64,000 nt of DNA from Guillardia theta CCMP2712 (lineage: Eukaryota > Protista > Cryptophyta): NCBI RefSeq assembly GCF_000315625.1, contig NW_005434656.1:820645-884644 (forward strand), written 5' to 3'. A model generated the notes under the pieces. The model was given only the letters and a program-made list of their open reading frames with translations, made no database searches and was not told the DNA's origin. This document shows positions 2,583 to 61,464 of this stretch, one piece after another (the stretch's first letter is position 1; every line of letters begins with the position of its first letter). The position numbers were made by a program, and so were the translations under genes.

Positions 2583-3700
2583 TCAGAGGACAGCAGCGGC
2601 GTTGGCGCGATGGAGGGCCCAGCCCACTGGCACTTCCCGCGTCCTGCGGTCGTTGAAGCACCAGCGCAGCAGGTTCTTCCCTCTTCCATCCAGCATGCCA
2701 GACAGGAAGAAGCAGTCTCCCGTCGACAGCAGCAGGTCCACCGTCCCGTTCACCTGGAGCAGCTCGCTGACGCTCCCCGACTTGAGGGAGTATACGACGC
2801 TCCTCTCCTCTACCACCACCACCGACGCCACCAGAAGTACGTTCCCCTGCACAGCAAGGGAGAACACGGAACCCTCCATCCCTGCCACGACTCTCCATCC
2901 TCCCCCGTCCCACCTTGCCAGCTTCGCCCGGGTCCCAACGTCCAGCAGCAGGTCTCCTCCCACATACAAGGAGCCGTCCGCTATCGCCAGCCCGCTCAGC
3001 ATCCCCTCCATCCTCCACCTGCTTCCCACCTCTCCCGCCAGCACCGACCAGCTGCTCTGATCCCACATGGCCACCCGCGCTGACTTGGCGCCTCCTGCCC
3101 CTCCGTCCACCAGCATGTTGCCGGCAACGAAGAGCTGCTGACCCCGCGCCGCTGCCAGCATGACGGAGCCGGAGACTGCTCCTCCTCCCACCGCCCTCCA
3201 CATGCTCCCATCCCACACAGCCACAGGGCCTGTCTTGGTGAGCGACCCGAGGCCGTTCCTAGCAGCGACGAAGGAGCCACCAGCCACCAGCTGCTCCTGG
3301 TAGCCGACAAGCACGTCCACCACCCCGTTCAAGCCGTAGGCGAGCGAGCGCGTGCTGGTGCCGTCCCAGGAGGCGACGTTGGCAACAAGCTCGCCGTTGA
3401 TGGCATCGAAGGAGCCGCCGAGGTAGAGGAGGCCGTGGAGGTAGACAATGGCGCGAACAGCCTGAAAGAGCGATGAGAGGTGCAAGAGAAGCGGGAGGGG
3501 GAGGAGACAGAGGAGAAGGAGGGGAAGGGAGGGAAGGAAAATGAGCGGAGAGGAGGAAGAGTAGAGCATGGGATTCAGCGGTACCTTGGAGATGTTCAGG
3601 TCGACGAGACTGCCGGTGCCTTCGCTGTAAAGCTCCGAACGGAACTGAGCGAGGAAACCCGCGTTGCCGTGCTGCCCGGCGAGGAAGAAGACGGAGAAGT
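2583..3700 (-). other. C-terminal beta-propeller (LYVGGxF / xWDGxxW repeats)
   Basis: LYLGGSF..VASWDG, LVAGGSF..AVWDGSMW, LFVAGN..AMWDQSSW, LYVGGD..ARWDGGGW. Confidence 0.7.
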
Positions 3701-6700
3701 CAAATGCATGCTGCTTGCTGCACCCGCGCGAGAGCTGCCCATCGCTGATGTTAACCAGCACGTCTGCCGACTCCTCCCCCGGAGGAGCAAGGCAAGTGAT
3801 CATGGTGTCCGACCTCACCTGCACCTCCGCGCAGGCTCCTCCTCCCACCGTCACTGACACGTTGCCATAGGAGGGAGCAGCGTAGCCCCTGCTGTACAGG
3901 GAGCCGAAGTACTCGCCGAGGACGGTGATGGTGTAGTTGCCCAGGGGCTGCCGAAGTTGGGGGAGACGGAGGAGATGCGGGGGAGGGGATAGACTTTGAG
4001 AGATGTCAGTATGATGCTCGACACGTTCTCCCCCCCGTTCTCCCTCCCCCCGTCATCCACGAGCACCATCGTCAGGGTCGCGGCCCCGTGCGCCGACGGC
4101 GCCAGCTCAAACTCGAGGGTGCCGGTGGAGGAGACGGTAGGAGGAGAGAGGAAGAAGCTCTCCGGTTGGACCGAGAGGAGGACAAAGGAGACTCGCTGGA
4201 TCGCGTCCTCGTACCTCGACCCTGCCGTCACGTCGAAGGCGAAATTGGGCACGGGCCCCGAGCTGCCTTGCAGAACTCCGTAGAAAGGCTGGAGGCTGAA
4301 GGAGGGAGGGCGGTTGACCGGGAGGATGTTGATGGAGAAGGCAGACGACTGCGAGCGGGTCCGTCCGCCCATGGAGATCGAGATGTTGACAAGGAACGAC
4401 AGGTTGGCGAATGTGCTGGGCTGCAGCTGGTAGCAGAGGGTCCCGTTGTCCAGCAGCTGGAGCGAGGAGAAGTAGTCTGCGGTAGCGAACATTCCCTCCT
4501 CGAGCAGGTGGTACTGGACGACCGTGGATCGCTCGTCGAGAGGAAGAGGGCTGTGCTCGACGAAGTCGGGGATGCAGGTTTGCGTGCTGGTCTTGACCTC
4601 CGTAATAGTGAGGAGGGGAGTCTTGAAGGAGAATGTCAGCGTCTCCGGCACCGCCGCTATGGTCAGGGTGAGGTTGACGTCGGTATTGTTGTATCCTCCC
4701 ATGCTCTCCCCGCCGTTGTCACTCAGTCGCACGGTGAGGAGGAAGACGCCATTCACGTTGCTGCTGGGGAGGAGCTGGAGGTCGACGCACGACCCGTTGA
4801 CTGTGACAAACAGGTGCTGGAACGCGACGCTGGGGGCCCAGGAGGAGCTCAAGGAGGAGATTGAGAGGATGGAGGCGCTCAGTGACTGGCCCTTCTCCTC
4901 CGCAGGGCCCGGAGCGAGGCCCTGGATGAAGCAGGGGGCTACGAGAGTCCCGGCGTCCTCCGTCCAGCTCAAGTCCTGCTGGACGAAGCTGAAGGTCGGA
5001 GGGAAGTTGATCCGCTCGGCGAAGACGCGCAAGGTGACGTTGCGAGAGGAAGCGAACTTGACACGACCGCTGAGGGGCGTCTGGGCGAGTCGGAGGAGGA
5101 TGTCGGCGGCTCCATGGCGGTACTTGGTGACGTTGATGGAGATGTAGGCCGACAAGCTCGAGCCGCTCATAGCGAAGAAGATGCGAGGAGGCTCAGCGAA
5201 AAAGGAGCCATCGGCTACCTGAATCGTCCAGACCAGCCCACTGCAGTTGCTCAAGGGTCTCATCGCTCCTGCCAAAGCTTGCACACAGCCCTGCTCCGCC
5301 CCTCCCGCGGAGATATCGGAGGCGAACATGAGGGTATGGAGCTGGTAGGGGTCAGCTGGGAAGGAAAGGTTGAAGAGGGTGAAAGTGATGACGTTGTTGC
5401 GGTAGGAGAAGGTGAAGTGCTTCTCCAGCTCGCTCTCTAGCTCAGTCCCAGCTGCCGATTGCCTCGTCTTGATCAGCTGGAGGTTGACGTTGACAAGCTG
5501 CGAAAGGTTGGAGATGTTGACCCTGAGGTCACCCGCCGCATCGATCTGCTCAGGGCAGAAGGGTCAAAAGAATACCAGGAGCGGAAGCAGAAGCATCGGA
5601 GCAGAGCAGGCGCATGAGGAGGAAGAAAAACACGAGGAGCAAGGACGAGCAGGAGGACGAGCAGGAGGAGGAAGTCAAAAGTCACCTGGAAGAGCCCGGA
5701 GACATCCTGACCATCTGAGGAAGCGGAGATGCGGTAGGAGAGCGTCTTGCAGGAGGAGAGATTTGCGGCGAGCGAGCTGAGCGTGCTCTCCTCCGCGATC
5801 GGAGACCGAGAGGGAGGAGAGCTCCCACAGAGCATCTCCGACTCTGGGACAGTCGAGTCAACCAGGAGGCGATCGGGAGAGGCAGCGAGCAAGCGGCTGC
5901 TGCCAGCAAGGCCGAGAAGGTTCTCATGGACGAGAGGAGGAGGGGAAGAGGAGGACTCTGCGATCATGGCGGTCCTCGCAATGCACACGTTCTCGTCCCC
6001 TGTGAAGTTAAAGACAACCACCTCCCTCCTCTCCGTGCTCAGCAACGCGACCGCCGTCTTGCTCACTGACACCATGCTGGTGATGCCCTGTAGCCCCTTG
6101 ACGATGTTGAAGCTCCAGTCAAGCGCGACCAGCCCGTCCTCCAAGGAGGAGAGGAGCAGCCAGCCCTTCCTGTCCATCGGCAGGAAGTCGAAGCTGAGCG
6201 CCCGGTCCATGTCGAGTTTGAGGGGCCGTGCAGTGAAGTCCTCGGCATGGTTGAAGAAGAAGCCACGGGCGTCGTAGTTATCTTCCTCCGAGACGATTGA
6301 GAAGTTCCCGAACACCTTGTCTTGGTGGTTGAACTGCAGGATGAGGACGAAACCTCTTCCTCCTCCGCACGATCCTGACCATGGGAGAGGCGAGAACGAA
6401 GAGAAGGCGACGGCGAGGTAGCTCTCGTAGTCAGCATTAAACTGGGAGATCGAGACAGCTCGGCGTTGTGCTGAGAAGATGCTAAGGAGCTGAAATTCCA
6501 GGAAGCTCCCTGCCTGCTCGTTCCACTTGTAGAGCACCGAATTGTCGATGCAGGAGCACGCCGGGCCCTCACAATCCGCCGACTTGGCCACTGAGAGGAA
6601 GTCGCCCTCGTTGGGGATGACGAAGACGTCCATGTCGAAGACGTTGGGAGCGGAGAGACACTGAACGAGCTGCAGGCTTCTGTCGTCCAGCATCATCTCG

Positions 6701-7194
6701 TACACGGCGACTGATCCCGGTGAAGTCTGGTTCGCCGTCGGGCAGTCGACGCTGGAGTAGAAGTTGGCGACGATCAGGTACAGCCTGTTACTGCTCAGTG
6801 ACTTCCACCACCTGCTCCTCAGAGCTCCGTTGGTCTGCAGCCTTGCAGACTCGAGGAATCGCTCGACCCTCGGGTCCCAGCTCAACACTCGGGAGGAGAC
6901 AACGGTCGACTCGCCATCCCAGAAGTTGGCGACTGCGAGGAGGAGGTTCGAGACCCCTTGGTCGTCCACGGAGATCAGGTCAAAGTCGTTGGAGTAGACG
7001 GTGTTCCTCCTGACGTCGAGGCTGACCACGTCGTTGACGAAGGGGGAGTGATGGAAGGCGAACGACTGGTTCTGAGCGTCCCACTTGTACACGTTGACGT
7101 AGTCGTGGCCGTTGTTGACGCCGTCAAGGGTGTTGGACACGATGAGGAGGAGGATCTCGCTGTAACAGACACGATCGTTAGAACCAGAAGATGT

Positions 7195-7236
<42 letters not shown>

Positions 7237-10200
7237 TCCATCATCACCACCGCCACCACACCGCCACAACAACAACCTCGACAGGACGAGAGAAGGACAA
7301 GAACAACAGACTCATTCAATCTCAGCACCTGTCAACTTGGTCCTTCATCAAGGCAAACTTGACACATGCCGCTGACGTGTCATACTTTGTGATCTGAATT
7401 AACGAGAAATTCCGATTGTTCTGATCCACCCGAAAGATTTTCACGAAACCCGTGGCAGCCGGGTCGACGCCACTCCCAGCAACTGCCACAAAAGTCCCGC
7501 TGGAGCAGCGAATATGAGCGCTGCTCCTCGCCGATAAGACGCGCTCCTCCGGCGGACTTTCGCCATCCATCCTGAAGATGGATGGGAGAGGGGAGCCGGG
7601 AGGAGGAGGAACAACGTAGTTGTTGGTCTGGATAAGCGACAGGAGTCCGTTCAAGGCTGTGAAACTTCCCAAGTCCCTCTCACCCTCCCGCATGCTGCAG
7701 ATGAAGCTTACACCAGCATCCCCGTACTTGAAGACGGCCAGCGACTGGTCGAACCATCCAGAGACGAAGACCAGGTTCCCCCCGCTCGCCATGGCCATCG
7801 CTCGCGCCCCCTTGAGCCCTGTGATTGTCCTGTCCTGCGACCACATGCCGTCCTGCAGCAGCTGCGCGAGCTCGATGTGGCCTGAGCTCTCGTTCCTGTC
7901 GAAGACGACAATCGCGTTGTCCACCCCGCTCGCAGCGATCAGCCGACGGCCATCGGGAGTGACGAGCACGTCGGAGACTCCTCGGAGCGGCGACCCGTCG
8001 CTTCCTTCACCGTGGACGTTGAGCACGGAAGGTTTGTTCACCGCCAGCTCCCTCGTCCACCCTGTGTTGAAGCTCGAGCTGGGCATGTAGATCAGCTCTC
8101 CGCTACCCTGGACGACCCGGAAGCAGGAGATTGAGCGGGACAGGCTGCTGGCAACATAGAGGAAGTGACTGTCGGGGCTGAACGCCAAGTGGAGGGGAGC
8201 CCGTAACCCGTGGACTAGTTCGCGGATGCCAACGAGCCAGGTGGACTTGATGACCTCTTGTGCTGGGGAGAGGTACCCTCCCAGGACTAGCAGGGGGGAC
8301 TTGACGTCTGGAGGAGACAAGAAGACGGAGGAGAGGGAGTTGCCCTGCAGCCTCTGCCCGTTCCCTGACGTCCGAGCTGGTCCAGCTGCGCTTGACGGGC
8401 CCACGAACCTGCCGTCGAAGAGACTGTAGAGGACGGAGCTGTCGGCCGCCTGGGAGACAACAAGGAAGGGCCTCTGGAAGGAGAAGTAACGTATCTTCGC
8501 AGCTCCCGATGTGCGGAGCTCCTGCACGAGGCTGAAGTCAAGGGCAGGACTCTGGTCAGAGCTCGAGAAGACGAGGGAGGGACTGGTAGCGTCATCACAA
8601 GCGAACGCCAGATAATGTTTGCCGTCGAAGTTGAAGTACTCCACGTCCGCCGCCCTCGTTGTCGCTACCTCGGCTCTGGTGGTCACAACCACCTTGCCCC
8701 CACTGCCCAGCCTCACGCCGTAGATGGCAGACGCTTGCGAGAAGGAGGAGAAGACAATGAAGGGAGTCCCTTGGTGGGTGAAGCTGGTCACGTCTGACGC
8801 CTGCTGGACGTCAAACTCCTGCATGCTCAAGCTCTCGAGCCGCTCAGACGTCAAGTTGTAGGCCATCGAGAAAGACGCTGCCAGCATCTGCGCCACAACA
8901 ATGAAGGTATCCGGAAGACCTTGGGAAGAGCTGGGGAAGCTGAGGAATGCGGCAGTCCGTGCTCCGTTGGTGTGGAAGGCGTCGAGCAAGCTGAGCTCTG
9001 CCGAGGAAGTATTGAGCTTCATCAGAACCGACATCGTACGGTACGTCAGCCCGTCGTCCTGGTTGGCGACCAGAAGGTGAGTCGAACCTTCCATCTGAAG
9101 GTAAGAAATGCTCCTTGCTCCCTTGACTGGATGCTGGATCGAGTGGGGCATCGAGGATGCGAGCTCGGGAAGGAAGAGATGCTCAGCAACGTGAGAGAGG
9201 TTGTTGAGGGACAGGAAGAAGTCGAAGCCGTCCTGGCTCTCGTTGTACATGAGGACCTTGGAGGTTGCGATGAGCCGTACGAAGGTCAACACGCCGGAGA
9301 GGCGGGCAGGCTTCAGGGCACAGGAGGGGGAAGACAGCCAGGACTGTTGGATGGCAGCAAACTCTGTCCGCTGCCATAGCGACCTCGACCTTGTCCCCGA
9401 TCGCTTCTTGACTGAGAAGATAGCCGCCCTTGCCGACCTGTTCCATGGCCCGAATGCACAGTTCAGCACGTCGGCATAACCGGTGTTGCACGTGCAGTTA
9501 CAGCCCAGGACAGCCTCAGCTGTCTGGACCTGCCCGTCAAGTGTGGTGAGGCTGCAGAGATGCCGCTCACCTGCACTGAACCTCCCGCGAACTGTCAGCT
9601 GGTCCTCTGCTGACCGTTCGTCAGGCAGGAAATACGAGGGGGAAGGCATGCCGGCCGCGTCCTCCACCCACACCCAGAACTCAGAGAGGTCGAGTGGGGA
9701 GGACTTGAGGGAGTCCTGTCTGATGGCGAACGTCTCCTGGACTTGCTGGAGGGACAGGGACTTGTCGAACATGAACACCTCCTTCATCGCTCCCACCAGC
9801 GGGCTGGACTGTCCGTTGAGCGGCGAGTGCGTCCCGATGGTAAGAGGAACCGCGGGGCAAGTAGCGCTGGTCGAGGGGGAGTAGAAGATGGGGCCACAGG
9901 AGGCGGAACGACAGGCCCCCATGGATCGAAGAAGCCTCCCGTCCAGGGAGAGGGACAGCGAGACTCCGTCATACGACCCTGAGAGGAAGTACCACTCTCC
10001 CAGCTGCAGCCCGGGCTCGATCATGTGTGACAGCACTACCATCCTCGGCCCGTACCCGCTCTCGTACACCGTGAGGTAGAAGTAGAGAGTGGTCGTCCTT
10101 GCCGCCTTGTCCATGCTGTAGGCGAGTAGCCAGCCTGACCTGTTACACTCCGTGCTGATCTCAGCGGCTCCTGCCAGGCCTCCAAACCCTACGTCATCGC

Positions 10201-22200: not shown

Positions 22201-25200
22201 CAGCACAGCCTCTGATGCCGCGATCCCTCCGAAGTCGCACACGTACTCCTCCTCCAGCCTGAAGNNNNNNNNNNNNNNNNNNNNNNNNNNNNNNNNNNNN
22301 NNNNNNNNNNNNNNNNNNNNNNNNNNNNNNNNNNNNNNNNNNNNNNNNNNNNNNNNNNNNNNNNCGAGGTCGACGTGGTGGGGCTCACGCTCGCAAACAC
22401 GTCCATGAACTGATACAGGCAGCCCGAGCTGTTGCCTTCCCGGCAGAAGATGGTGATGTTCTCCTCGCCCTTGGCTTGTCTCAGGCTTACCACGCATGGG
22501 CCTGGCAGAGCTCCGTAGCGAGACCCCCAGGGCGGAGTCAGGCAGCTCAGCGACGTCGAGTTCCTCGCATNNNNNNNNNNNNNNNNNNNNNNNNNNNNNN
22601 NNNNNNNNNNNNNNNNNNNNNNNNNNNNNNNNNNNNNNNNNNNNNNNNNNNNNNNNNNNNNNNNNNNNNNNNNNNNNNNNNNNNNNNNNNNNNNNNNNNN
22701 NNNNNNNNNNNNNNNNNNNNNNNNNNNNNNNNNNNNNNNNNNNNNNNNNNNNNNNNNNNNNNNNNNNNNNNNNNNNNNNNNNNNNNCGCCCTCGTTAACA
22801 CCAAGACCCTGAGGATGATGGAGAAGTTCACCGCCTGGTAGTTGTACAGCCATGGCGGACTCGTGCAGTACATCCGGTCATACATGCCCTCCACCAGCGT
22901 CGCCTCTACCTCAAGTGGTCCGAACACACACCGGTACCCCTTGAGCATGTAGTCGAAGCCCACTCCAAGCACCTCGATTCTCAGCCCGCCTGCTGCTGGG
23001 GCTGCCGATGCGTTCCTGCTCAGCCAGTGCGCGGAGAAGTAGAAGCTGCTGTCCCCAAGCACCGTCACGGCTTGTGACGCGCACGAGTAGTTTGCCGGCA
23101 CCTTCACCCGCACGCTCATCGTCAAGCTCCGCGCCTCAAGCAGCCACGCCGGGCTGATGCAGACAAGCTTCGTCGTCGACTCCGGCAGCACAGCCTCTGA
23201 TGCCGCGATCCCTCCGAAGTCGCACACGTACTCCTCCTCCAGCCTGAAGCCGGACCCCGCTACCTCCAGCGCTACTCCCCCCGACGAGGTCGACGTGGTG
23301 GGGCTCACGCTCGCAAACACGTCCATGAACTGATACAGGCAGCCCGAGCTGTTGCCTTCCCGGCAGAAGATGGTGATGTTCTCCTCGCCCTTGGCTTGCC
23401 TCAGGCTTACCACGCATGGGCCTGGCAGAGCTCCGTAGCGAGACCCCCAGGGCGGAGTCAGGCAGCTCAGCGACGTCGAGTTCCTCGCATGCGCCTCCGT
23501 GCACATCCTCTCCTCCCCCCGGCTGAAGCAGCACTCGTACCCCTGAGAGATGTAGTCCAGCCCGAAGCCCCTCACCAGGATCTCCGACCCTCCGCTCGCT
23601 GGCCCGGTGACGCACCCGCTCTCGCTGCCTACCAGGCTGTCCCAACCCTGCGTTAGCAGCAGGATCCTGTCCGTCTGGTTGGCTGGCCCTAACAGCAGCT
23701 GGACAGTTCCTGGGGTTTCTTCTGCTTCGACCGAGACGTTGACATAGCCGTAGGGGAACAGCCAAGGCAGGAGGAAGAACTTCAAACTCCTTGAGCTGGT
23801 CAGGGAGACGTTGGCTGCGAGGCGAAGTTCGCCTCGTTCATCCCTCAGCACGAGCGAGTAACTGATGGAAGGGAGGAAGCCGTAGCCTTGAACCTCCAGC
23901 AGGTCCCCACCTCTCGCTGGGGTCACGGTGGGTCGGATCAGCTTCCACTCATGGAACAAAAAGATCTCGACGTGTTTGATGCTCACGTTGCAGAGTGAAG
24001 GCAACTCGTTCTGCCCCACGTAGGCCGAGTAGTTGGCATGGCCTAAAACCGGGTACCTTTGACCACTGACGTTTTGCCATAGTGAGACATTTACAAAATC
24101 CTGATGGTAAGGCCATGACGCAACCTCGCACGCAATCAATGTCGAGTCGACGACTCTTGCCCCGAGGGAGTACATGAAGCCGTAGCTGCTCGTGAAGACA
24201 CAGAAGAAAGTCGCTCGGTCACTGAAGCCCTGTCCCTCTACCATCACCTCCCAGCCCCCGCCAGCCGGCCCCGAGGTCGTGCTGGGGGAGATCGAGGCCC
24301 AGTCCGTGTAGAAGTAGACGTCGCAGTCAGAGCCGCACTGAGTTTGGTACACGCTCTGGTAGGAGATCTCCCAGTCAGACTGATAGGCAACCACTCGCAC
24401 AGGCTCATCAGGAGGGTCCGAGCAGGTCAGGGCCTCGACCCACGAGCCTCCGAACCTGCTCCCCCAACTCGTCGTGTGGGAGCAACGAAGTTTGACGTCA
24501 CTGACGGCAGAGCAGCCCACTGTGAGGTTCTGACTACCCCGAACAAGGAGCACGTGGTACGAGGAGTTGAAATCGAAGCCTGACCCGGCCAGCTCCAGCA
24601 CAATCCCTGAAGAGGCCGGAAGGGTATGGGTAAAGGAGGGATCGATTCCGCGGAAGGATTCGACGAGCTCCAAGGCAAGGGAACCCCCGACACTGTAAGT
24701 GACGTTGGTCAACCCGGCCACAGTCAGTTGTACTACCCCAGCTGCCTGTCGCCAGACTGGAATGGTGCAAGATGCGAAGGATGTGTTAATGAGTGTCAGC
24801 GGAGTTGTCAGTTGATACCCCTTCCTCGTGAACACGCACTCGTACTCGCCGTGGATGTCAAACCAGGAGGCCTCGAGCAAGACTGAATTGTTTCCTCCTA
24901 GCAAGACACTGGTCGGTTCTACTTTGACCAGGTTTGACGATGACTCGAATGGCAGGACATGAAAAATAAACGGAAGCTGATCAAAAGCAACAGGAACTTT
25001 CTCGTAGAACTTGACAGCAAGACTCTCGTAGCTCCCTTCCATCCCTGCTTTTGATCCCCAGTATCCCTGCTCGATGATGTTGATGTTCGAGAGGTTCGTG
25101 ACGTCGAGAAGAAAGAATTCTTCTCTGACTCTTACTATGTCTGTCTTCACCACAGCTTCTAGCAAAGTCTCTGACACGTTCCCTCCACCTCCGGCAAGAA

Positions 25201-28200
25201 GGAGCGCGAAGTTGTCAAAGTGCGAAACAGACTTGTACAAGGTCACGTTGACGAACCACTCGTCCCGTGAGGCGTAAAACTTCAGCCCCGTGCTATCCTC
25301 CAGCACGCTCTGAGCTCCACGCGTCTTTGCCCAGAAGGATAGGTTCCCGAGGGGCGTCGGGCAAGTCAGCTGGTCTGCTCGAGGGCCGACGGAGGCCTCC
25401 GACCAGGACGAGAAGCTCTGGGAGGAGAAGACGCAGACGTAAGATTCTCTGACGTCAAACCCGCCTCCAGCGAAAGAGAGCGTCGTGTTCCCTCCTGCTG
25501 GCCCCCTGCCCTCCCCCTCGAAGCTGCTGATGGCCTCTAGAAAGTCGAAGGTGACCATATGCTTGGCGTCCACCAGGTTCACAAACGAAGTGGAGCAGCT
25601 AGGGTACAGGCAGACAGAGCAGTTGGACTGGAAGCACCGGGTGCCGTCGGGGTTGCCCGTCTCGAAATCGACCTGAGAACCGTTGAAGGTCCAGGGAACC
25701 CTCGAGCCATCCCGCCTCATCAGGGTCAGGTTGGAAGTCGCCGCGCGGAAGAGCCAGACCGGCGACTTGCAGCTGAGGGTCTGGTCGGAGAGGACGAGAA
25801 CTTCGCTGGTGCTCCACATGTCAGGGCTGCTGTAGAAGAGGCAGTAGAAGCCCATCAAGTAGTCCGTGCGGTTGTCATGGGTGAACCCGAAGCCCTGGAG
25901 CTCGAGGTCGACGGGAAGGAAAGCGTAAGACGAGGTGCTGCCGCTGAAGTTGGTGATCGCTGCTGAGATCCGGAAGGAACGGGTGGAGAAGCCCCTCTCG
26001 AGCTGGGCGAAGCCGACGGTGCCCATGGTGTCCTCGTTGTAGATGACAAGCTCCGTCAAAGTCTCGGAGAAGTTCCAGGCCGGGACGACGCAAAGGAGGG
26101 GCTGGGAGGAGGTCAAGTGGTATTGAGACGTGGCGAAGCTCTTGATCGGCTGAGACCTCTGGGTCACCTGGTCGAGGTAGACGGACTTGAACTGGCAGCT
26201 ATACCAGTCCCCCTCCACCATCTCGTTGGTGTAATGGATGGCCCCGGCGAGGAAACGAGGGTCGTTGTCAGGGACGAGGAGGGAGACTAGGTGGACAGGG
26301 TAAGAGCTCTCGATGTTGCCGAACGTGAGGGTCCCGCTCGTCAGCTCGACAAACGCGTCCGAGAACTTGGGGCACTGGCCGCGTTTGCACTCACTGTCGT
26401 ACGACAGGATGTCAGCGTACAGGATCTCCCCTTGGCAGAGCACGAGGAACTGTCGCTCCTCGTTGGCGGCGATGGGGAACGGGTCGACAGAGAGGAGCGG
26501 CGAGTCTTGGCTGACGTTTGTGGCAGCGTCCGATATCGACCTCCAGCAGACGGAACAGTTGCTCTCGCTCTCCAGGAAGTTCATAGCGTCGCTGCAGGCA
26601 CAAGGTTCCAGCACGAAGGGGACGCAACTCACCTCTAGTCCAGCTGGGGTCCTCATCTCAATGGCCGTGAAGTTCACCGGGTGCTGAGCCCTCAGCTTAA
26701 AGGTGATCCCCGCAAATTGCGAGCTGGGAATCGGGTTGGCCGTGCTGGGGCTGGCGGAGCGAAAGTTCGTCTCGTTGGCCTGCCCGAACCCTGGGATGCT
26801 GGCGGGCCGGGAGAGGTAGGTGTTGTTGAGGCCCGAGGCCAGGAGCTGCATGAGCTCACCCCCTCTGACCGAGGCCTGAGTGAAAGAGAGGTACTCGAAG
26901 GAGGGGAGCACCGCAATGTGGTAGAGCGCGCGAGAGAAGACGAGGACGTTCACGACAGAGGCTGCGGGGTAGGAAGCGAGGACCGAGTTGAGGTAGCCCC
27001 GCTGCACGACGAACGTCCCATCCCCGTTCACCCTCTGCACCTGCAGGAGCTCCTTGTCCAACAACAGCATCCTCCCCACAAAGAGATACTGGTCCATCCT
27101 GGCGTCCGGGCTGATCTTGATCGCACTGTCCAGCACGGAGAGGTCACTCTGGAGCGTGAAGGTGACGTTGAGTTTCAGGAAGAAGCTCACTCCCTCTGCC
27201 GGGACCTCCCACAGCCCCTTAGTGTTGCACTCCATCCATGAAAAGTTGCCGGGCCGTCCCTGGACCTCTTGCGTGCGGACTGAGACGCGGCCAGGGCTCA
27301 CTGGAGTCAGGAAGTGCCCCAGGTACTCGCCAAGGAATCCGAACCCGAAGATGGGCAGGAGGAGGCCGGAGAGAGGAGCGTTTGTTTCGGGGAGCGACAC
27401 GACCTCTGCCATGAACTTCACAAGAGGGTCGACAAGGGGACTTGCGAGCTGAAAACCGTCGGAGACGATCTCGAGAAAGACATCGTCCTCGTAGAAGGGC
27501 CAGGCTGACGTCTCCACCTCGAGGCTCTGGCATGAGGCCACGAGCACCAGCGGGCTAGGGGAGGAGAGTGAGGAGTTGGTGCGGCTCCTGAAACGAGCCA
27601 CGTACTGCATCCTGCTGTTGAAGCCTACCCCCTCCACCACAAACGAGGACCCGCCTCCTGCCGGCATCCAGTACCCTCCTGTCCAAGGGAAGATAAGGTT
27701 TAGCCCGTAATCTTGAGAGGGAATGTTCATGGAGGTCCAGGTAGCGATGTAGCGGAACTGGAGGATGGGATGAAGTCCAGGGTGAGCCAGGGACCCACCC
27801 TTCTCCTGATCCACGAGAGCGCAGGACAGCGAGGGGTCACAGGCATACAGCTGCACCTGAACAAGTCCCTCCATTCCCGAGTAGGGCGGAACTTGTATGA
27901 GAATCTGGTCGACTGTTCCCCAGATGGAGGAGGAGGAGTGAGCGGCAGAGACGGCCCGAGCCACGGATCCGTCGCAATTGACCCCCTCGAGATGTGCGTA
28001 GTATCGAGCAGAGGAGTCGAAGCCAGCAAGTGAGAATCGGATCCACCCGTCTGCGGTGGAGGAGCTGCCGTCGGACAGGACGACGCCCGTCTGGATCGTC
28101 TCGAACCACCATGAGGACAGAAAGTTCACGACCCTCGCTCCTTGGATGCCATCGAACCGCACGAGCTCGTCCTGCTGCGCTCCTCCTCGCATCCTTGACA

Positions 28201-31200
28201 CCGTGACGTACGCGGAGCCAGGGTCTCCTTGCCAGAAGGGAACGACACAGAGCAGCATCTTGCGAGTTATAAAGACTGCGTTATCGATCGACCTCTGGGT
28301 GTACGACCCTGAGGAGGAAGTGAAATGGCACTGGTAGGTGGCAGAAGGGTCGAAGCCCCTGCCATTGACATAGACGAACGTCCCGCCGGAGGCGTGGAGG
28401 TCGCATGCCGTCACTTGCAGAGTTTCGTCGCACGTGATGCCGGTCCAGACCTCTGAGATGTTGAAGCTGTCGATGCTTGTGGTCCCCCAGGTGACTTGCT
28501 GATCGTTCTCTACCAGCTGCACCTTGTAAGTCGACGAGATGTAGTCCGGGATGGGCGAGAAGGAGCACTTGACTTGCTCGGGGCTAACGACGACGATGCT
28601 GGAAGTGGAGAAGAGGTCCTGGCCGTTGATCATGCGACAGAGCTGCGCGCCTGTCGAGATCCCCAGCCCTTGAATGAAGAACTCCAGACGGCCCTGCCAG
28701 ACATCCAACGTGACGTTGGACACGCTCGTCACCACAGGATACAGCTGCACATTCAGGTCGGAGGCACCAACGGCCGAGCCCGAGCTGTTGAGGGCAGGGA
28801 TGACCTCGTCGTTGTGAACGAGCTCTACACGAAATGTGTCCGCAGCGAACTGACACCTTGGAACAACGATGTAAGCTCTGCCTGTGATGGGCGATAGCTG
28901 GACGGGGGAAGTGAAGACAACCCCGCCAGAACTCAGCATACGGAAGCGGCAGACATAGCTCTCGTTCTGCAGCAGCCCGTAGGTAATGAGATGAAGTACC
29001 TTGTCTCCCAGGCAAGGGAGACTATCTCTGCTGCAGTTGAGCAAGTTGGTAGGGTTGGAACAAGAGTCGAACCCGGACCAAGTGGCGTTGTACCTCATCT
29101 GCAGTGTCCTCGTGGCATACCCCGACTGGAGTGTCACGCGGACAGCAGCCAGCGGAGACAAGACGGTGCTATTCCTTACAGGAGCTTCGCACGAGATTGC
29201 CGTCGTTGACAAGAAGCTGGCAGGCGTGCGCAGGTGCTCTGACTCGATGTCGAACGCGCATGACATGTTGGCGGATGTTGATGGCAGAAACCCGGACCCC
29301 CTGACAGTGATGGTGCTAGAGCCGCTGAAGGCAAGAACGGTCGGAGGCACGACCCTCCTGATCTGAGGGAGAAAGCTGAGAGTCGTTTCATAAGAGGCGT
29401 AAGAGACGGGGGTCAGGCTGTTGGCCTCCAGCAGCAGCAGCTGGGCTGGACCTTCATATGGCCAGATCGGAGCATAACAGCGGAGCTGCTGATTAAACTG
29501 CGGTGCGACACGGGCAGCGCAGCTCAAGTCCTTGCAGGGAGCGAGGCAAAGCTGGTCAGTCCGATAGGAGGAGGCGCAGGCATCGGTATAGACAAAGTTG
29601 GTCGTGTTCTGAGGATCGACGAACTTACAGATGTACGAGTTCACGTTGCACAGATAGTCGTTGGAGGCAAAACAAAAGTTGTCTCCATTCACCGTGATGG
29701 TCCCTCCATCCGCTGGCACCAGACCTGGCCCAATTGTCGAGATTCCTGCCTGAGTGAAACGGATGGTCGGCTTGGGGCCCTGGGATATGCTGTAGCTGCC
29801 GCCGCGAACGATGTCAAGGACAGTGTCGTGGGAAGCCTGTGAAGATGGGAAGAAGATCCAAACGGGAGTGACGCACTCTAGGAAGGAGCTGTTGATTACT
29901 TGAGCGTTCGGCGAGTCTGCCTGCATCGTGCTGGACGTCTTGGAGGTGAAACGACACCTGTAGGGCAGGGCGGGATCGGTGGAGAAACCCTGGCCGTGTA
30001 CATGGATGACAGCACCTCCACGAGCAAAGGAGAAGAAGAGGAGCTCTTGATTGAAAGAGTTCAACGTCGATGTGGCGTAGAACCAGACGCTGAGAAACTC
30101 GAACCTCAACTGACCGCTGCCGCCCCAGTCCACCCTGCTTCTGTTCTCCCGTGCAAGGGTGAAGTTGCAGATCACTTGAGCCGGTACACTGCTGGCGTTG
30201 CAAGTGATCTCGTTCTTGCTGATCCTCTTGGTTGGGGTGTCGTAAATGGCAGAACTCGGACAGCTCCACAGACATACGAAGGAGGGCAGAAACGCGCTCC
30301 CAAGGACCTGCAGCGATTCGCCGCCAAGGAAAGGAGCAATTGCTGGCGTGAAGGTAAGGAAATATGCCAACACCGAGACAACTCTGTCCTGCCCGTACCA
30401 ACCAACAACTGACCCGTTCACCAGCAGCATTGCACTCGTTTCACATTCCACAGAGTCCCACGGCTTCATCGGACAACGCAATTCTGTATTGGACTGAAGG
30501 GAACAAGGAACCTTGTACAGATATTCAGCATCATCTTGACACTGGAGTATCAACTCGAACTTCGCGCCCGCTGGAGGGTTGAGCCCCTCGCCACCGATTG
30601 TCAAGGTATCAGACCCAGCTGAGCTGACCTTGGATGGAGAAATCGAGTTCCATCCAGATCGGAGATATTCAAAAGAATAATTACAATATGAGATTGCAGC
30701 TTGGTTGTACGTTGCCCGTAGAATCCCGACTCCAGATGCGAATGGGACAGTAGGCGACTGACACGTCACAGATGTATGATCCAAGAAAGAGGCTGTGACA
30801 TTGATTTGGAAATCTTGAATCGAGAAAGAGCATTTTACGGTCGTATCAAACCTATGCCCATGTAAAGTGATGGTTGACCCTCCGATTGCGAGGCTTTTGC
30901 TGGGCTCAACAGACGTGCAGAAAGATTGGTAGATAAAGAATAAAGGCTTTAGAGACATGACATTGATGTCTCCATTCTTAAGTGAAACTTGAGTGGAGCA
31001 ATAGCTGGTCTCCCATGGAGGAAGCTTGAACGCAAGGGCGGAAGGGTTGACAAAGGTCCCGTACTCTGATGCTATCTCTGTACTTTGGCTTGAGCATATG
31101 AATGTACATCGATACCGCCCAGAGACCGAGAATCCAGCGCCGTGTACGGTGATCATGTCAGATACGTCGGTAACTTCAACAGGGGACAACTCTTTGACAC

Positions 31201-32101
31201 TCTCTGTTGCAATTAGCATGTCAGAACCATAGTAGAGGTTGGTGTGGAAACAAGAAAAAATCAAGCTCACCATAGAAGAGGATTTCAAACACTCCCCCGC
31301 GCTTGTAAAGGAGGTCCTGTCCGATCAAAACGTCGAGAACGACAACTTCTGCTGAATGATTCCAGAAAGGAGCTTGGCAAACCATGCTGTTGAGTGTTAT
31401 GTTGCGAGCGGGCTTCTGGATAGAAACATCTGCTCCAGTAAATCTACAGAGAAGTCAAGTCGAGACAAGACGTGCATGGGTATGGTTTACTTGCAGGAGT
31501 ATTGCTGTTGCGGATTGAAACCAAACCCATGTACCAACAGATCGCTTTCAGAAGCAGCAGCTACCTCCTTGTCATCAGCCTTGGTCCATCCACCTGCGTG
31601 CAAGACTTAGTAAATCAAGTGATGCCAAACATGTCAGACATGGCACACCAGAAAAATTAAACTGCAAGAGTGTGCTGTTACTAGCAACTTTCATTGGTCC
31701 CTCGTACAGAAGAAATGCTGTGTTGTATGCCGGAAAATTCCACTGGGTCACCGTGCACAGTATTTTGCTCGTACTCGAGATGTCGGCGGGTACAGTCAAG
31801 TGACAATTATTAGATTCCAAGGAAGCTTTCCACAAGTAGTCAACAGCTGTAGTGTAGTTGCAAACGAAAGCGCAGGAATACTCATATCTGTCGTTGAACC
31901 CTCTCCCTGTCACTGTGACTTGCACTGACTGGTCGGCGGGACTTGTCTGCGGAGATATAGAGTAGACCATTCCTGCATTGAACGATGAGGGGAGGGAAGA
32001 CAAGAATAGAATCAAAGTAGCTACTGACCTCGGGCTGACATAAAGGACGTGAAGAACAGGAGACTTGCAAGGACGAGGCTGCGGTTAGAATTTTGCTTCA
32101 T
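2583..32101 (-). CDS. Giant secreted multidomain adhesin-like protein (~9,000-9,500 aa): IPT/TIG array, cadherin-like repeats, LamG, EAR/EPTP, beta-propellers
   Basis: ATG at 32101 begins MKQNSNRSLVLASLLFFTSFMSAR|G (signal peptide; intron 31973-32028). The ORFs 31575-32015, 22547-31288, 13942-22497, 11127-14036, 10724-11107, 10353-10655, 7322-10345, 5473-7275, 3851-5329 and 2583-3860 lie on one strand and are joined by GT-AG introns (e.g. 13927-14038 LEIR|ILPVNNRPSF), N gaps and one apparent frameshift near 3945. Stop at 2583. Confidence 0.85.
3990..5560 (-). other. Second short cadherin-like repeat block (about 4 repeats)
   Basis: INFPPTF, LSDNGGESMGG, PVNRPPSF, LVDDGGRENGG. Confidence 0.75.
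6110..9150 (-). other. EAR/EPTP-like repeats flanking a lactonase-type 7-bladed propeller segment (about 7700-8220)
   Basis: HLLVANQDDG, YLAFA, LLLAVANFWDG, YLIVANFY, SVLYKWN..F..FQ (EAR-like); HLAFSPDSHFLYVAS, VTPDGRRLIAASGVDNAIVVFDRNESSG (lactonase-like). Confidence 0.7.
7195..7270. repeat. (CAT)n microsatellite inside an intron of the giant gene
   Basis: Direct tandem atc repeats; the poly-D/poly-H ORFs here are intronic artefacts. Confidence 0.85.
9700..10460 (-). other. LamG / concanavalin A-like domain in the giant protein
   Basis: ALQFDG...ITVAMWV...WYFLSGSYDG..LSLDG...LTIG...GAMKEVFMFDKSLS. Confidence 0.75.
11530..18660 (-). other. Array of about 16 bacterial-type cadherin-like/Ig-like repeats
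   Basis: Repeated (P/Y)VN(D/N)xPxF ... IS.GP.NE..Q.LTF ... G.L.F ... L.D(D/N)GG..xGG consensus. Confidence 0.8.
18660..31972 (-). other. IPT/TIG domain array of the giant protein (about 35-40 domains, estimated from length)
   Basis: Recurrent SxSPxxG...GG..(I/V)xVxGxGF....YxCxF....LxCx(T/S)P.W pattern. Confidence 0.8.
19667..23651 (-). repeat. Coding tandem repeat with a 918-bp (306-aa, three IPT domain) unit; at least 4 near-identical copies, interrupted by 3 assembly gaps
   Basis: Identical shadow ORFs at 19667-20020 and 20585-20938 are offset by 918. The peptide QGWDSLVGSESGCVTGPASG recurs. N runs at 21281-21380, 22265-22364 and 22571-22786. Confidence 0.92.
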
Positions 32102-42839: not shown

Positions 42840-43595
42840 ATGAAGCGACTTAGCATGATGCGATACTGGAAAGCTGGTCCGTCCTGTCTCAGATCATCTT
42901 GCAGCTTCCTCTGGCACAAACTATCTCGCTCCTCTTGCTTGCCCGCTCAACCACCCACCAAGCTATGCCTCTCCCAGCCGTCGACACGCTCCCCCATGAT
43001 GATCAGATGGGACTATGCCCATCCTGCCACACGAGATACCACACGACGATCGTTCTGCGAGCAGCAGCGACAGGCTGACTTGCACATAGATTGTATCGCC
43101 ACCCCCAACCCAGATGCACTGAAGTTTGACGTGGGTCATGATGTAACGGGGAGCCTTCAGTCCTTGTCGATCAGCCATGGAGATCTGCACATGTTCCAAC
43201 AAGACCAGCATCTAGCCCACATAGCAACCCAGTTGTTTGCCGTCAAAGGAGTGCGCACCCTTCTGTTCGGCCCAGACTTCATCACGGTGAGGAGCCGGGA
43301 ACGAGATTGCCTGCCCCGTCACGATGTTCTCTTGCCAGGTTGTCAAAGACCCCGAAACGGAATGGGCGGAGACGGAAGAGCTGCTGATGCAGGTCCCTGC
43401 CCCTCCTGCTGGCTGGGTTCTCCTGACGTCAGCAAGCAGATCTTGCAGGAGGAGCTCAATGCGGCCAGACAAGATTGCCGTCCTCTAGCTAAAATCTCTC
43501 AGGAGAGCATCAACCAACTGATAGCGAGCAAGTTTGATCAGAGCCAAGTGCGTGCTGTAACTCCCTCTCCTCTTCTTCTCCTTCTCCGTCTTGTC

Positions 43596-43651
<56 letters not shown>

Positions 43652-44082
43652 CTTCTCCTCGCCCCCCAAATTTCAGGCCGGAGTCGTTGAGAAGATCCTG
43701 GAGCTCCTTGAGGAGAAGGTGGCGCCGCACGTCAGGGCCGACGGTGGAGATGTACAGGTGCAGCCAAGGCCTTGCTGACCTGCTCGCTCCTCCTCCTCTT
43801 GTGGTCTGACTGCCGCCGCAGTTTCGGGGCTTCAAGGATGGAGTTGTGTGGCTGTCGCTGGTTGGAGCCTGTACCTCTTGCTCGTCTTCTACCGTCACAG
43901 TCAGATTCATGGTTAGAGGAGGTGGTCACCGTAATCTGCATGCTAACATGATCGTTAGATCCGCAACCTTCTTATGCACTACATGGATGAAGTACGCTGT
44001 CAGACATGGAGGTTGGCTGGTAACAGATATGCAGGTGAAAGACGTAAAGGCGATAGAGCAAGGTGAACAAATCCCCTCCTAG
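42840..44082 (+). CDS. NFU1: Mitochondrial NFU1 Fe-S cluster scaffold; multi-exon
   Basis: TPNPDALKF, LFAVKGV..LLFGPDFITV, VAPHVRADGGDV, LVGACTSCSSS (CxxC). Confidence 0.9.
43600..43648. repeat. (CT)n microsatellite in an NFU1 intron
   Basis: Direct observation. Confidence 0.9.
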
Positions 44083-61283: not shown

Positions 61284-61464
61284 GATAATTTAGTCCTGGA
61301 ACAGTCTATCCATCTTTGACCGTCTTGCTCCTGCTCGCTGGCTGGCTATCACACACCTCCCTGGNNNNNNNNNNNNNNNNNNNNNNNNNNNNNNNNNNNN
61401 NNNNNNNNNNNNNNNNNNNNNNNNNNNNNNNNNNNNNNNNNNNNNNNNNNNNNNNNNNNNNNNN

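What the first reader, a model, noticed from the sequence alone, without database searches (positions are those of the whole stretch)
2583..32101. A single ~29.5-kb gene encoding a ~1-MDa secreted mosaic protein (IPT array - cadherin-like array - LamG - EAR/propellers)
Seen: about ten same-strand ORFs join through canonical short introns into one reading, from a clean signal-peptide exon (ATG 32101) to a stop at 2583. Known: IPT/TIG arrays occur in fibrocystin/plexins, LamG plus EAR repeats in ADGRV1/TSPEAR, and DDGG cadherin-like repeats in giant bacterial adhesins. I know of no described protein combining all of these. The C-terminus (…HRANAAAVL*) has no TM helix. Inference: a giant secreted rod with lectin/propeller heads that could serve as a cell-coat (periplast) fibril, adhesion or prey-capture, or extrusome component. 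Automated annotation would probably fragment it.
Basis: partly seen in the sequence, partly recalled or inferred. Interest (0 to 1): 0.9.

Follow-up and report, generated by a model that had tools for sequence, protein, structure and literature searches.

The report
Giant secreted adhesin-like gene, cryptophyte
A 29.5-kb stretch of this alga's nuclear DNA is almost certainly one gene for a secreted protein of about 1 MDa, a long rod of about 65 Ig-like and cadherin-like domains with lectin and propeller heads. It belongs to an undescribed family that also occurs in other cryptophytes and in uncultured plankton.

Summary
The observation largely holds. On the minus strand, 2583-32101 reads as one gene: a signal-peptide exon, 13 GT-AG introns of 47-188 nt, and about 9,360 assembled codons (about 1.02 MDa).

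The domain order is:
- signal peptide
- about 40 IPT/TIG domains
- about 22 cadherin-like repeats
- LamG
- an EPTP/EAR propeller
- a lactonase-type propeller
- a second EPTP-like propeller
- about 4 cadherin-like repeats
- one TIG domain
- a Rax2-like propeller

There is no transmembrane helix.

- The ORF change at 3940-3947 is a 1-nt frameshift inside conserved coding sequence, not an intron.
- Some introns are hidden inside the long ORFs.
- The three gaps lie in a 918-nt tandem unit (three TIG domains, 97-100% identical copies). The flanks are colinear and come into frame if the array is regular. The copy number is unresolved.

The single-gene reading rests on three things:
- One uninterrupted 7,734-codon ORF on a metagenome scaffold is colinear with all the main ORFs.
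- Two Rhodomonas salina transcriptome proteins bridge the middle junctions.
- At least three colinear paralogues lie in the same genome. This scan noted one on other DNA (s1-448924).

RNA evidence is nearly nil: six reads and no splice joints. The function, a calcium-stiffened extracellular fibril with binding heads, is inferred. It is a new architecture built from known domains.

The parts
32029..32101 (-). Exon 1: start codon and signal peptide (24 codons plus 1 base), followed by a GTCAGT donor
31271..31972 (-). Exons 2-4 (31972-31649, 31593-31491, 31443-31271): the first IPT/TIG domains, separated by GT-AG introns of 55 and 47 nt
   Evidence: Pfam TIG 27.5 bits; chain open; self-HMM hits
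22787..31203 (-). Exon 5: 2,805 open codons of IPT/TIG array, running into gap 1
   Evidence: Pfam TIG 142.8 bits, plus TIG_2 and TIG_plexin; 17 TIG cores found by self-HMM
19665..23653 (-). Near-identical tandem array. The unit is 918 nt (306 codons, three TIG domains), with about 4.3 assembled copies at 97-100% identity. It contains all three assembly gaps (21281-21380, 22265-22364, 22571-22786).
18729..21279 (-). TIG part (about 850 codons) of the 2,413-codon exon 21279-14039. The switch from TIG to cadherin-like repeats lies inside this single open exon.
14039..18660 (-). Cadherin-like repeat array, part 1 (10 repeats detected, about 14 expected from the spacing)
11147..13926 (-). Exon with cadherin-like array, part 2 (6 repeats detected, about 8 expected), after the 112-nt intron 14038-13927
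10407..11097 (-). Three small exons (11097-11008, 10956-10759, 10711-10407). The last is a conserved linker module that runs into the start of LamG. Introns are 49, 51, 47 and 145 nt.
   Evidence: The 10356-10754 ORF is homologous to Rhodomonas proteins P0014 and P0017 and to L009.
9737..10261 (-). LamG / concanavalin-A-like lectin domain
   Evidence: Pfam Laminin_G_3 35 bits, cut-off 27.6; profile hit to pappalysin LamG 7.7e-11; AF2 pLDDT 85-94
8192..9124 (-). EPTP/EAR beta-propeller, preceded by one TIG-like sandwich at about 9360-9600
   Evidence: Pfam EPTP 38 bits, cut-off 21; profile hit to the LGI1 EPTP domain 6.8e-12; AF2 pLDDT 80-89
7329..8191 (-). Second propeller of the same exon, of the lactonase (6-phosphogluconolactonase) 7-blade type
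   Evidence: Pfam Lactonase 40.2 bits, cut-off 21.7; PDB profile hits 5e-13; bacterial propeller-repeat proteins match the blades only
5686..7276 (-). Exon with a poly-Asp linker (an ATG/GAT microsatellite at about 7200-7260), then a second EPTP-like propeller
   Evidence: 5 of 6 homologous segments hit Pfam EPTP (best 1.8e-11); the window's own copy scores 14.3 bits, below the cut-off; Atlas lead
3945..5497 (-). Exon with about 4 more cadherin-like repeats (two detected at 4694-5020 and 4031-4327) and the first strand of the last TIG domain
3940..3947 (-). One-base frameshift in the assembled sequence, inside conserved coding sequence (no intron)
3585..3944 (-). Last IPT/TIG domain
   Evidence: Pfam TIG 26.9 bits
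3462..3584 (-). In-frame 123-nt GT-AG intron hidden inside the ORF. It is CT-rich and absent from the homologues.
2583..3461 (-). Last exon: C-terminal Rax2-like beta-propeller, with the stop codon at 2583-2585
   Evidence: 33% identity to P0026. Homologues hit Pfam Rax2 at 50 bits, cut-off 28.8, while the window's own copy is below threshold.

Best explanation
It encodes a secreted, non-membrane protein of about 9,400-9,500 residues (about 1 MDa).

Shown here:
- The gene has a signal peptide and about 40 IPT/TIG domains.
- About 22 cadherin-like repeats follow. These are distant relatives of the bacterial tandem-95 / Big_9 repeats.
- Next comes a head made of a LamG lectin fold, an EPTP/EAR propeller and a lactonase-type propeller.
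- The tail holds a second EPTP-like propeller, about 4 more cadherin-like repeats, one TIG domain and a Rax2-like propeller.
- This order is conserved in paralogues and in other protists.

Inferred:
- The Ig-like and cadherin-like domains form an extended rod a few hundred nanometres long, probably stiffened by calcium.
- The lectin and propeller modules are the binding ends.
- The protein would then work as an extracellular fibril or link on the cell surface (coat, adhesion, or cell-cell or cell-particle contact), by analogy with the fibrous ectodomain of ADGRV1.
For: One gene:
- The exon chains stay open through 13 GT-AG introns.
- The switch from TIG to cadherin-like repeats lies inside one 2,413-codon exon.
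- Locus L009, a metagenome scaffold, has a single 7,734-codon ORF colinear with every main ORF of the gene: 22787-31324, 21382-22263, 13945-21279, 11130-14045, 10356-10754, 7325-10396, 5476-7311 and 2586-4052. ORF 3854-5563 matched only the repeat arrays of L009 there; its own place between 5476-7311 and 2586-4052 is shown by P0077, the called 4,402-aa part of that ORF.
- Rhodomonas salina transcriptome proteins P0014 and P0017 bridge ORFs 11130-14045, 10356-10754 and 7325-10396. P0017 continues into ORF 5476-7311.
- P0026 and P0151 bridge ORFs 7325-10396, 5476-7311, 3854-5563 and 2586-4052.
- Paralogues on contigs 24, 7 and 72 (C24, C7, C72) keep the same order.
- The gap flanks are colinear in a 918-nt repeat and are in frame if the array is regular.

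Domains.

Secreted:
- The N-terminus is a signal peptide.
- The only hydrophobic stretches are translated CT-rich introns.
- There are 175 NxS/T sites and 235 Cys.

RNA: six RNA reads fall in exons, five of them with the orientation expected for a minus-strand RNA.
Against: - No splice junction was seen in RNA. Only 6 reads were laid, about 6% of one run was read, and no joints were reported.
- The assembled sequence has a 1-nt frameshift at 3940-3947. If it is real, the product ends at 3854 and lacks the last TIG domain and the Rax2-like propeller.
- The three gaps make the copy number of the 306-codon unit, and strictly also continuity, unproven.
- Other in-frame introns may hide in the large exons.
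- The cadherin-like repeats fall below the Pfam and NCBIfam cut-offs, and the fold matches are only Z 5-6.
- Calcium binding, rod shape, location and ligands are all inference.
Confidence: 0.6

Rival explanations
1. The interval holds two or more separate genes, for example a TIG-array gene and a cadherin-like/LamG/EPTP gene. In this reading they only look continuous because of same-strand ORFs and the assembly gaps.
For: - Three gaps of unknown true length interrupt the array.
- No RNA joint was observed.
- Prokaryote-style gene callers split the homologous loci L010, L012 and L013 into several ORFs.
Against: - The TIG-to-cadherin switch lies inside one exon.
- L009 carries the whole order in one ORF.
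- Rhodomonas transcripts bridge the middle junctions.
- All gap flanks belong to the same 918-nt unit, in the same orientation and register.
- There is only one signal peptide and one stop, and no TIG or cadherin-like hits outside the interval.
Confidence: 0.07
2. The locus is a decaying or C-terminally truncated copy. In this reading the frameshift at 3940-3947 is real, and the product stops at 3854 without the last TIG domain and the Rax2-like propeller. Expression is close to nil.
For: - There is a frameshift inside conserved coding sequence.
- Only six RNA reads were laid on 6 kb.
- Intact paralogues exist that could cover the function.
Against: - More than 9,300 codons are otherwise open, including exons of 2,805 and 2,413 codons.
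- The sequence after the shift is still open and 33% identical to homologues over 391 residues, which points to a recent change or a base-calling error in the C-run or G-run.
- About 6% of the one RNA run was read.
Confidence: 0.15
3. The gene structure is the same but the role is different. It could be a sexual or gamete agglutinin, a component of flagellar hairs or scales, or cargo of the ejectisome or secretory vesicles, rather than a general surface fibril or adhesin.
For: Nothing here tells these roles apart. All of them fit a secreted rod with terminal binding domains and low expression in a vegetative culture.
Against: - No domain specific to any of these structures was found.
- From my own knowledge, not tested here: ejectisome ribbons are built of Reb-like proteins.
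- The family is multi-copy and present in diverse plankton. That fits a general surface role at least as well.
Confidence: 0.25

Closest known systems
ADGRV1 (VLGR1) ectodomain and TSPEAR (animals)
   Same: - It pairs a LamG-type lectin fold with an EPTP/EAR seven-blade propeller (Pfam thresholds met; LGI1 EPTP profile hit 6.8e-12).
- As in ADGRV1, these are embedded in long arrays of small beta-sandwich repeats of a calcium-binding type.
- It is very large and extracellular.
   Different: - The arrays are TIG and cadherin-like, not Calx-beta.
- No transmembrane helix was detected, so there is no 7TM region. No Pfam search reported a GAIN or thrombospondin-N domain.
- It has extra propellers (lactonase-type, a second EPTP-like one, Rax2-like).
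- Sequence similarity is limited to the domain-family level.
Bacterial tandem-95 / Big_9 / Cadherin_5 giant surface proteins ('VCBS repeat', 'Ig-like domain-containing')
   Same: - The cadherin-like array aligns over about 90% of 791 residues at about 30% identity with such proteins of 2,000-4,200 aa.
- It has the same repeat length of about 100-110 residues and the same N-terminal xNDxP and C-terminal DDGG-type motifs.
   Different: - The window's repeats fall below the curated cut-offs (Big_9 19.4 bits against 23.6; tand_rpt_95 53.8 against 90).
- The gene has spliceosomal introns and a eukaryotic signal peptide.
- It is fused to TIG, LamG, EPTP and Rax2-like modules, a combination not seen in the listed bacterial hits.
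Fibrocystin / PKHD1L1 and plexin-type IPT/TIG proteins
   Same: It has long tandem IPT/TIG arrays in an extracellular protein (Pfam TIG, TIG_2, TIG_plexin).
   Different: - No G8, PbH1, PA14, Sema or PSI domains were reported.
- There is no transmembrane segment.
- The TIG array here is far longer (about 40 domains).
Classical cadherins, protocadherins and CDH23/PCDH15
   Same: - A profile of 45 repeats hits C-cadherin EC4 over the full repeat (E 1.3e-4) and protocadherin gamma-A9.
- The AF2 model (pLDDT 90.9) is a seven-strand sandwich whose best structural matches are mostly cadherin EC domains (Z 5.0-5.5).
   Different: - The matches are weak, and Pfam Cadherin (PF00028) is not hit.
- There is no transmembrane or cytoplasmic region.
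- Calcium-site residues are only partly recognisable.
Unnamed homologues: Rhodomonas salina EukProt proteins (P0014, P0017), metagenome proteins P0077/L009, P0151, P0026, P0183 (a TARA sample), P0142 and P0013, and paralogues in this genome on C24, C7 and C72
   Same: They show the same colinear module order at 23-33% identity. These are true family members.
   Different: - None is characterised or named ('hypothetical protein').
- Some are intronless single ORFs.
- Some carry extra CUB or EGF domains.

Membership tests
IPT/TIG domain proteins (Pfam PF01833) | Match to the TIG model above the gathering score | tested here: met
   142.8 and 138.9 bits against a cut-off of 20.9 in the two large ORFs. 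Also 27.5, 35.2 and 26.9 bits in ORFs 31578-32084, 21382-22263 and 2586-4052.
Laminin G / ConA-like lectin (Pfam PF13385) | Match above the gathering score, plus the fold | tested here: met
   35.0 bits against a cut-off of 27.6. Profile hit to pappalysin LamG 7.7e-11. The AF2 beta-sandwich has pLDDT 85-94.
EPTP/EAR repeat propeller (Pfam PF03736; LGI1, TSPEAR, ADGRV1) | Match to the EPTP repeat above the gathering score, and similarity to a solved EPTP propeller | tested here: met
   38.0 bits against a cut-off of 21. The LGI1 EPTP domain matches at 6.8e-12 over about 175 profile positions. The second EPTP-like region (5686-7276) is itself below threshold at 14.3 bits, but 5 of 6 homologous segments match.
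ADGRV1 / adhesion GPCR | GAIN domain and seven transmembrane helices; Calx-beta repeats | tested here: not met
   No Pfam hit to Calx-beta, GAIN or 7TM. No transmembrane-grade hydrophobic stretch apart from translated introns.
Bacterial tandem-95 repeat (NCBIfam NF012211) / Big_9 (PF17963) | Score above the curated cut-off | tested here: not met
   tand_rpt_95 scores 53.8 and 33.9 bits against a cut-off of 90. Big_9 scores 19.4 and 18.4 bits against 23.6. Even so there is clear distant homology: about 30% identity to many such proteins.
Cadherin superfamily (EC-domain fold) | EC-type seven-strand sandwich with calcium-binding linker motifs | tested here: inconclusive
   Profile hit to C-cadherin EC4 at 1.3e-4. 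VIA Z is 5.0-5.5 to many EC domains, but also 6.0 to a sialidase Ig-like domain. The Foldseek E-value is no better than 0.37. N5, P8, E43 and D94 are conserved in more than 90% of repeats. Calcium binding was not tested.
Rax2 C-terminal beta-propeller (Pfam PF12768) | Match above the gathering score | tested here: inconclusive
   The window's own C-terminus has no hit. The homologous C-termini of P0026, P0151 and P0077 score 50.6, 51.0 and 29.0 bits against a cut-off of 28.8. The window is 33% identical to P0026 over that region.
Fibrocystin / PKHD1 family | G8 and PbH1 (parallel beta-helix) domains and a C-terminal transmembrane helix, in addition to TIG arrays | tested here: not met
   None of these was reported by Pfam. 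No transmembrane helix.
Secreted protein (classical secretory pathway) | N-terminal signal peptide; no membrane anchor | tested here: inconclusive
   The n/h/c-region pattern was read by eye, and a TIG domain starts directly after it. No signal-peptide predictor was available. The C-terminus is not hydrophobic. Secretion itself cannot be tested here.

The most novel reading that the evidence does not exclude
The LamG-plus-EAR/EPTP binding module set in calcium-binding repeat arrays, known from animal ADGRV1 and TSPEAR, may be part of an ancient family of extracellular megadalton fibrils in cryptophytes and other plankton, so far unrecognised. These proteins, with 4 or more paralogues per genome, would form the fibrous surface coat or links of the cell. 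The 918-nt near-identical TIG units would let fibril length vary quickly between strains.
Probability: 0.25. Interest if true: 0.7.

Novelty: new variant of a known kind. Interest (0 to 1): 0.55.

Why it matters
If the model is right, this is among the largest proteins encoded by a model cryptophyte. It would be the type member of an undescribed, multi-copy family of secreted fibrous proteins shared with Rhodomonas and with uncultured marine and freshwater plankton.

It would give a concrete molecular candidate for the fibrous surface material of cryptophyte cells. It would also place EPTP/EAR and LamG modules, usually discussed as animal adhesion and neuronal domains, in a far wider evolutionary setting.

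It is also a practical warning. On the related metagenome contigs, prokaryote-style gene callers split these genes into several ORFs. Short- or medium-read assemblies cannot count the near-identical 918-nt units.

Tried and rejected
- **Word-index search:** The search for homologous proteins with the 1,024-aa LamG/EPTP ORF found nothing. This was a limit of query length and word index, not absence. The exhaustive search then found 2,780 hits.
- **Top exhaustive hits:** P0001-P0012 turned out to be bacterial propeller-repeat proteins (Lactonase, DUF11, SdrD_B, GH10) that match the blades only. I rejected them as orthologues.
- **Tandem Repeats Finder:** it reported no array at score 200 or above and period 500 or less. 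The real unit is 918 nt and was found by blastn.
- **Reads:**
  - Runs X1-X3 are low-depth genomic contigs that run through introns.
  - The RNA run gave 6 reads and no joints.
  - So splice sites rest on sequence and homology only.
  - Neither the frameshift site nor the gaps were in the one stretch I could lay.
- **A 47-nt intron at 3994-3948:** I considered this GT-AG candidate as the link between ORFs 3854-5563 and 2586-4052. I rejected it because the 'intron' translates into the conserved first strand of the TIG domain.
- **P0151:** its length (3,705 aa) equals that of the ORF on C24, but it is only 25-28% identical to it, so it is not that paralogue.
- **Repeat and head searches:**
  - A profile of only the window's own 18 repeats gave no PDB hit.
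  - Foldseek on the repeat model was weak.
  - Foldseek on the 977-aa head model gave only generic lectin-plus-propeller and double-propeller matches.
- **Literature:** four searches found no description of the family.
- Everything was done exon by exon, by reference.
Full report
**What is in the sequence.**
- On the minus strand, long stop-free frames follow each other from 32084 down to 2586. They are 31578-32084, 22550-31324, 13945-22794 (across three N runs), 11130-14045, 10727-11113, 10356-10754, 7325-10396, 5476-7311, 3854-5563 and 2586-4052.
- An ATG at 32101 opens 24 codons with a basic start, a 14-residue hydrophobic core and a small-residue end. A GTCAGT donor follows.
- HMMs built from the gene's own TIG and cadherin-like repeats hit only these minus-strand ORFs in the whole 64-kb window. 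The outer limits 2583 and 32101 are therefore reasonable.
- The genome has 87,145,349 bases in 669 contigs. That equals the 87.2 Mb given for the Guillardia theta nucleus (PMC4007541).
- The nearest named relatives of the protein are from the cryptophyte Rhodomonas salina.

**Gene model.** I checked reading-frame continuity exon by exon, by arithmetic on coordinates.
- The 5' part is open from the ATG to the first gap, 3,030 codons. Its exons are 32101-32029, 31972-31649, 31593-31491, 31443-31271 and 31203-22787.
- The 3' part is open from 21279 to 3854. Its exons are 21279-14039, 13926-11147, 11097-11008, 10956-10759, 10711-10407, 10261-7329, 7276-5686 and 5497 onward.
- All these introns are GT-AG, 47-188 nt long and CT-rich.
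- A further 123-nt intron (3584-3462) is in frame and hidden inside the last ORF. Its translation is a Leu/Pro/Ser-rich stretch that the homologues lack.
- The intron after 7276-5686 could instead be 5575-5523. Both versions keep the frame.
- In total there are about 9,358 codons in assembled exons, about 1,016 kDa, 175 NxS/T sites and 235 Cys. Of the 29,519 bases, 28,103 are coding.
- Other in-frame introns inside the big exons cannot be excluded.

**The junction that is not an intron.**
- ORF 3854-5563 and ORF 2586-4052 overlap by about 200 nt.
- The upstream frame still encodes the conserved first strand of a TIG domain down to about 3944. The downstream frame encodes the conserved continuation from 3944 on.
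- The metagenome homologue P0026 and the paralogue on contig 24 of the same genome (C24, one 3,705-codon ORF) read through this point without a gap.
- So the assembly carries a one-base frameshift within the C-run/G-run at 3940-3947.
- I could not tell a base-calling error from a real mutation. My single read-laying run covered 5420-11400.

**The gaps.**
- The DNA from about 19,665 to 23,653 is a tandem array of a 918-nt unit (306 codons, three TIG domains). Its copies are 97-100% identical.
- All three gaps lie inside it.
- The two short pieces between gaps are 100% identical to neighbouring units.
- The flanks of each gap are in the same orientation and register.
- Compared with a regular 918-nt spacing, the nominal gap lengths are too long by 2, 65 and 12 nt.
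- Correcting by these amounts puts each pair of flanks into the same reading frame (my arithmetic).
- Continuity in frame is therefore the simplest reading. It is not proven, and whole units (each in frame) may be missing or may have been placed twice.

**Is it one gene?** The strongest evidence is comparative.
- The exhaustive protein search with the LamG/EPTP ORF gave a set of colinear full-length matches, besides many blade-only hits to bacterial propeller proteins.
- Two of these are R. salina transcriptome proteins. P0014 (2,501 aa) and P0017 (2,229 aa) run from cadherin-like repeats through the small linker ORF into the LamG/EPTP exon. P0017 continues into the next exon.
- Metagenome proteins P0026 and P0151 link ORFs 7325-10396, 5476-7311, 3854-5563 and 2586-4052.
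- The scaffold carrying P0077 (locus L009) has one uninterrupted ORF of 7,734 codons, cut by the contig end. It aligns in order with the TIG array, the 918-nt-unit region, the TIG-to-cadherin exon, the cadherin array, the linker, the LamG/EPTP exon and the ORFs 5476-7311 and 2586-4052. ORF 3854-5563 matched only its repeat arrays in that comparison; P0077, the called part of this ORF, places 3854-5563 between the last two.
- Other contigs show the same string of same-strand ORFs: a TARA ocean sample, JGI samples and one further ENA sample.
- Within this genome, C24 (about 574.0-599.6 kb), C7 (about 249.5-263.5 kb) and C72 (about 295.5-313.6 kb) carry paralogues at about 25% identity with the same order. 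C23 carries a partial one.
- In the window itself, the change from TIG domains to cadherin-like repeats happens inside one 2,413-codon exon.

**RNA evidence is nearly absent.**
- The holders X1-X3 are low-depth genomic contigs that run through the introns.
- The one RNA run gave six reads, all in exons. Five had the orientation expected for a minus-strand transcript. None crossed a junction.

**Domains.**
- Pfam gathering scores are met for TIG, Laminin_G_3, EPTP and the lactonase-type propeller.
- A 12-sequence profile of the head exon hits three kinds of solved structure: the LGI1 EPTP domain (6.8e-12), 6-phosphogluconolactonase-type propellers (5e-13) and the pappalysin LamG domain (7.7e-11).
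- The AF2 model of this exon has mean pLDDT 70. It shows a confident lectin sandwich, a small sandwich and two propellers. Its Foldseek matches are generic.
- The next exon is EPTP-like by transitivity: 5 of 6 homologous segments hit EPTP, the window's own copy scores 14.3 bits, and the Atlas gives an EPTP lead.
- The C-terminal propeller is Rax2-like by transitivity.
- The cadherin-like repeat is about 100-130 aa. It starts with xNDxP and ends with DDGG. Eighteen copies were detected and about 26 are expected.
  - It is below the Pfam Big_9 and NCBIfam tandem-95 cut-offs.
  - It aligns at about 30% identity with many giant bacterial tandem-95 / Big_9 / Cadherin_5 proteins.
  - As a 45-repeat profile it hits C-cadherin EC4 at 1.3e-4.
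  - It folds with pLDDT 90.9 into a seven-strand sandwich whose best matches are mostly cadherin EC domains at Z 5-5.5.
  - 'Cadherin-like' is fair. Membership of any curated family is not shown.

**How it probably works (inference).**
- About 65 tandem sandwich domains of about 4-4.5 nm each would give a rod of a few hundred nanometres.
- The conserved acidic motifs at the repeat borders suggest calcium stiffening, as in cadherins.
- The lectin fold and the four propellers are the likely binding parts.
- With a signal peptide, no membrane anchor, many Cys and many N-glycosylation sites, the best reading is an extracellular fibril or link of the cell surface.
- I put about 0.85 on 'one gene for a secreted giant of this architecture'. 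I put about 0.45 on the surface-fibril or adhesion role.
- Surface coat, mating agglutinin, flagellar appendage and secretory cargo cannot be told apart here.

**Comparison and novelty.**
- The closest functional analogue is the ADGRV1 ectodomain (repeat arrays plus LamG plus EAR), together with TSPEAR. This protein has neither Calx-beta repeats nor transmembrane helices, and no GAIN domain was reported, so it is not a member of that family.
- It is also not a fibrocystin (no G8 or PbH1) and not a classical cadherin.
- The real relatives are unnamed hypothetical proteins.
- Four literature searches found nothing on this architecture. The library does not cover subscription journals.
- I rate it a new variant of a known kind: a new, conserved domain architecture made of known extracellular modules.

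**Limits.**
All searches were exon by exon, by reference.

Noticed in passing
window 19665-23653: A 918-nt tandem unit (three TIG domains) has copies 97-100% identical at the DNA level, far more alike than the rest of the TIG array (about 25% at protein level). This suggests recent amplification or concerted evolution, and likely length variation between strains.
   Followed up: partly
window about 7200-7260 (minus strand): An ATG/GAT trinucleotide microsatellite lies at the start of exon 7276-5686. It is read as a poly-Asp run between the two propeller regions and could be a variable acidic linker.
   Followed up: no
window 10388 and 6107: Low-depth genomic contigs of runs X1 and X3 differ from the assembly by single-base indels: an extra G after 10388, which is inside an intron, and one base missing at 6107, which is coding (depth 2.4). 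These are probably read errors. They do show that single-base indel differences exist between these low-depth data sets and the assembly.
   Followed up: no
G000 C24 about 574.0-599.6 kb (+), C7 about 249.5-263.5 kb (+), C72 about 295.5-313.6 kb (-), C23 about 481.9-487.9 kb (+): Paralogous giant genes with the same module order at about 25% identity. The C24 copy includes a single 3,705-codon ORF and C72 one of 6,055 codons.
   Followed up: partly
L009 1-24568: The metagenome homologue is one ORF of at least 7,734 codons without introns. GC falls from 63% at its 5' end to about 39-45% further on, an unusual gradient within a single ORF. The organism is unknown.
   Followed up: no
L010 / L011 and L012: Homologous loci in uncultured plankton carry extra modules (CUB in the N-terminal ORF, EGF/teneurin-type EGF in the C-terminal ORF). 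In L010 and L011 they sit next to a Glyco_transf_90 gene and a thioredoxin gene.
   Followed up: no
window 42840-43778 (+): An ORF with an Nfu/NifU N-terminal domain (40 bits). The other large ORFs tested between 35 and 58 kb have no Pfam match.
   Followed up: no
window 61365-61464: A fourth assembly gap of 100 N, outside the finding.
   Followed up: no
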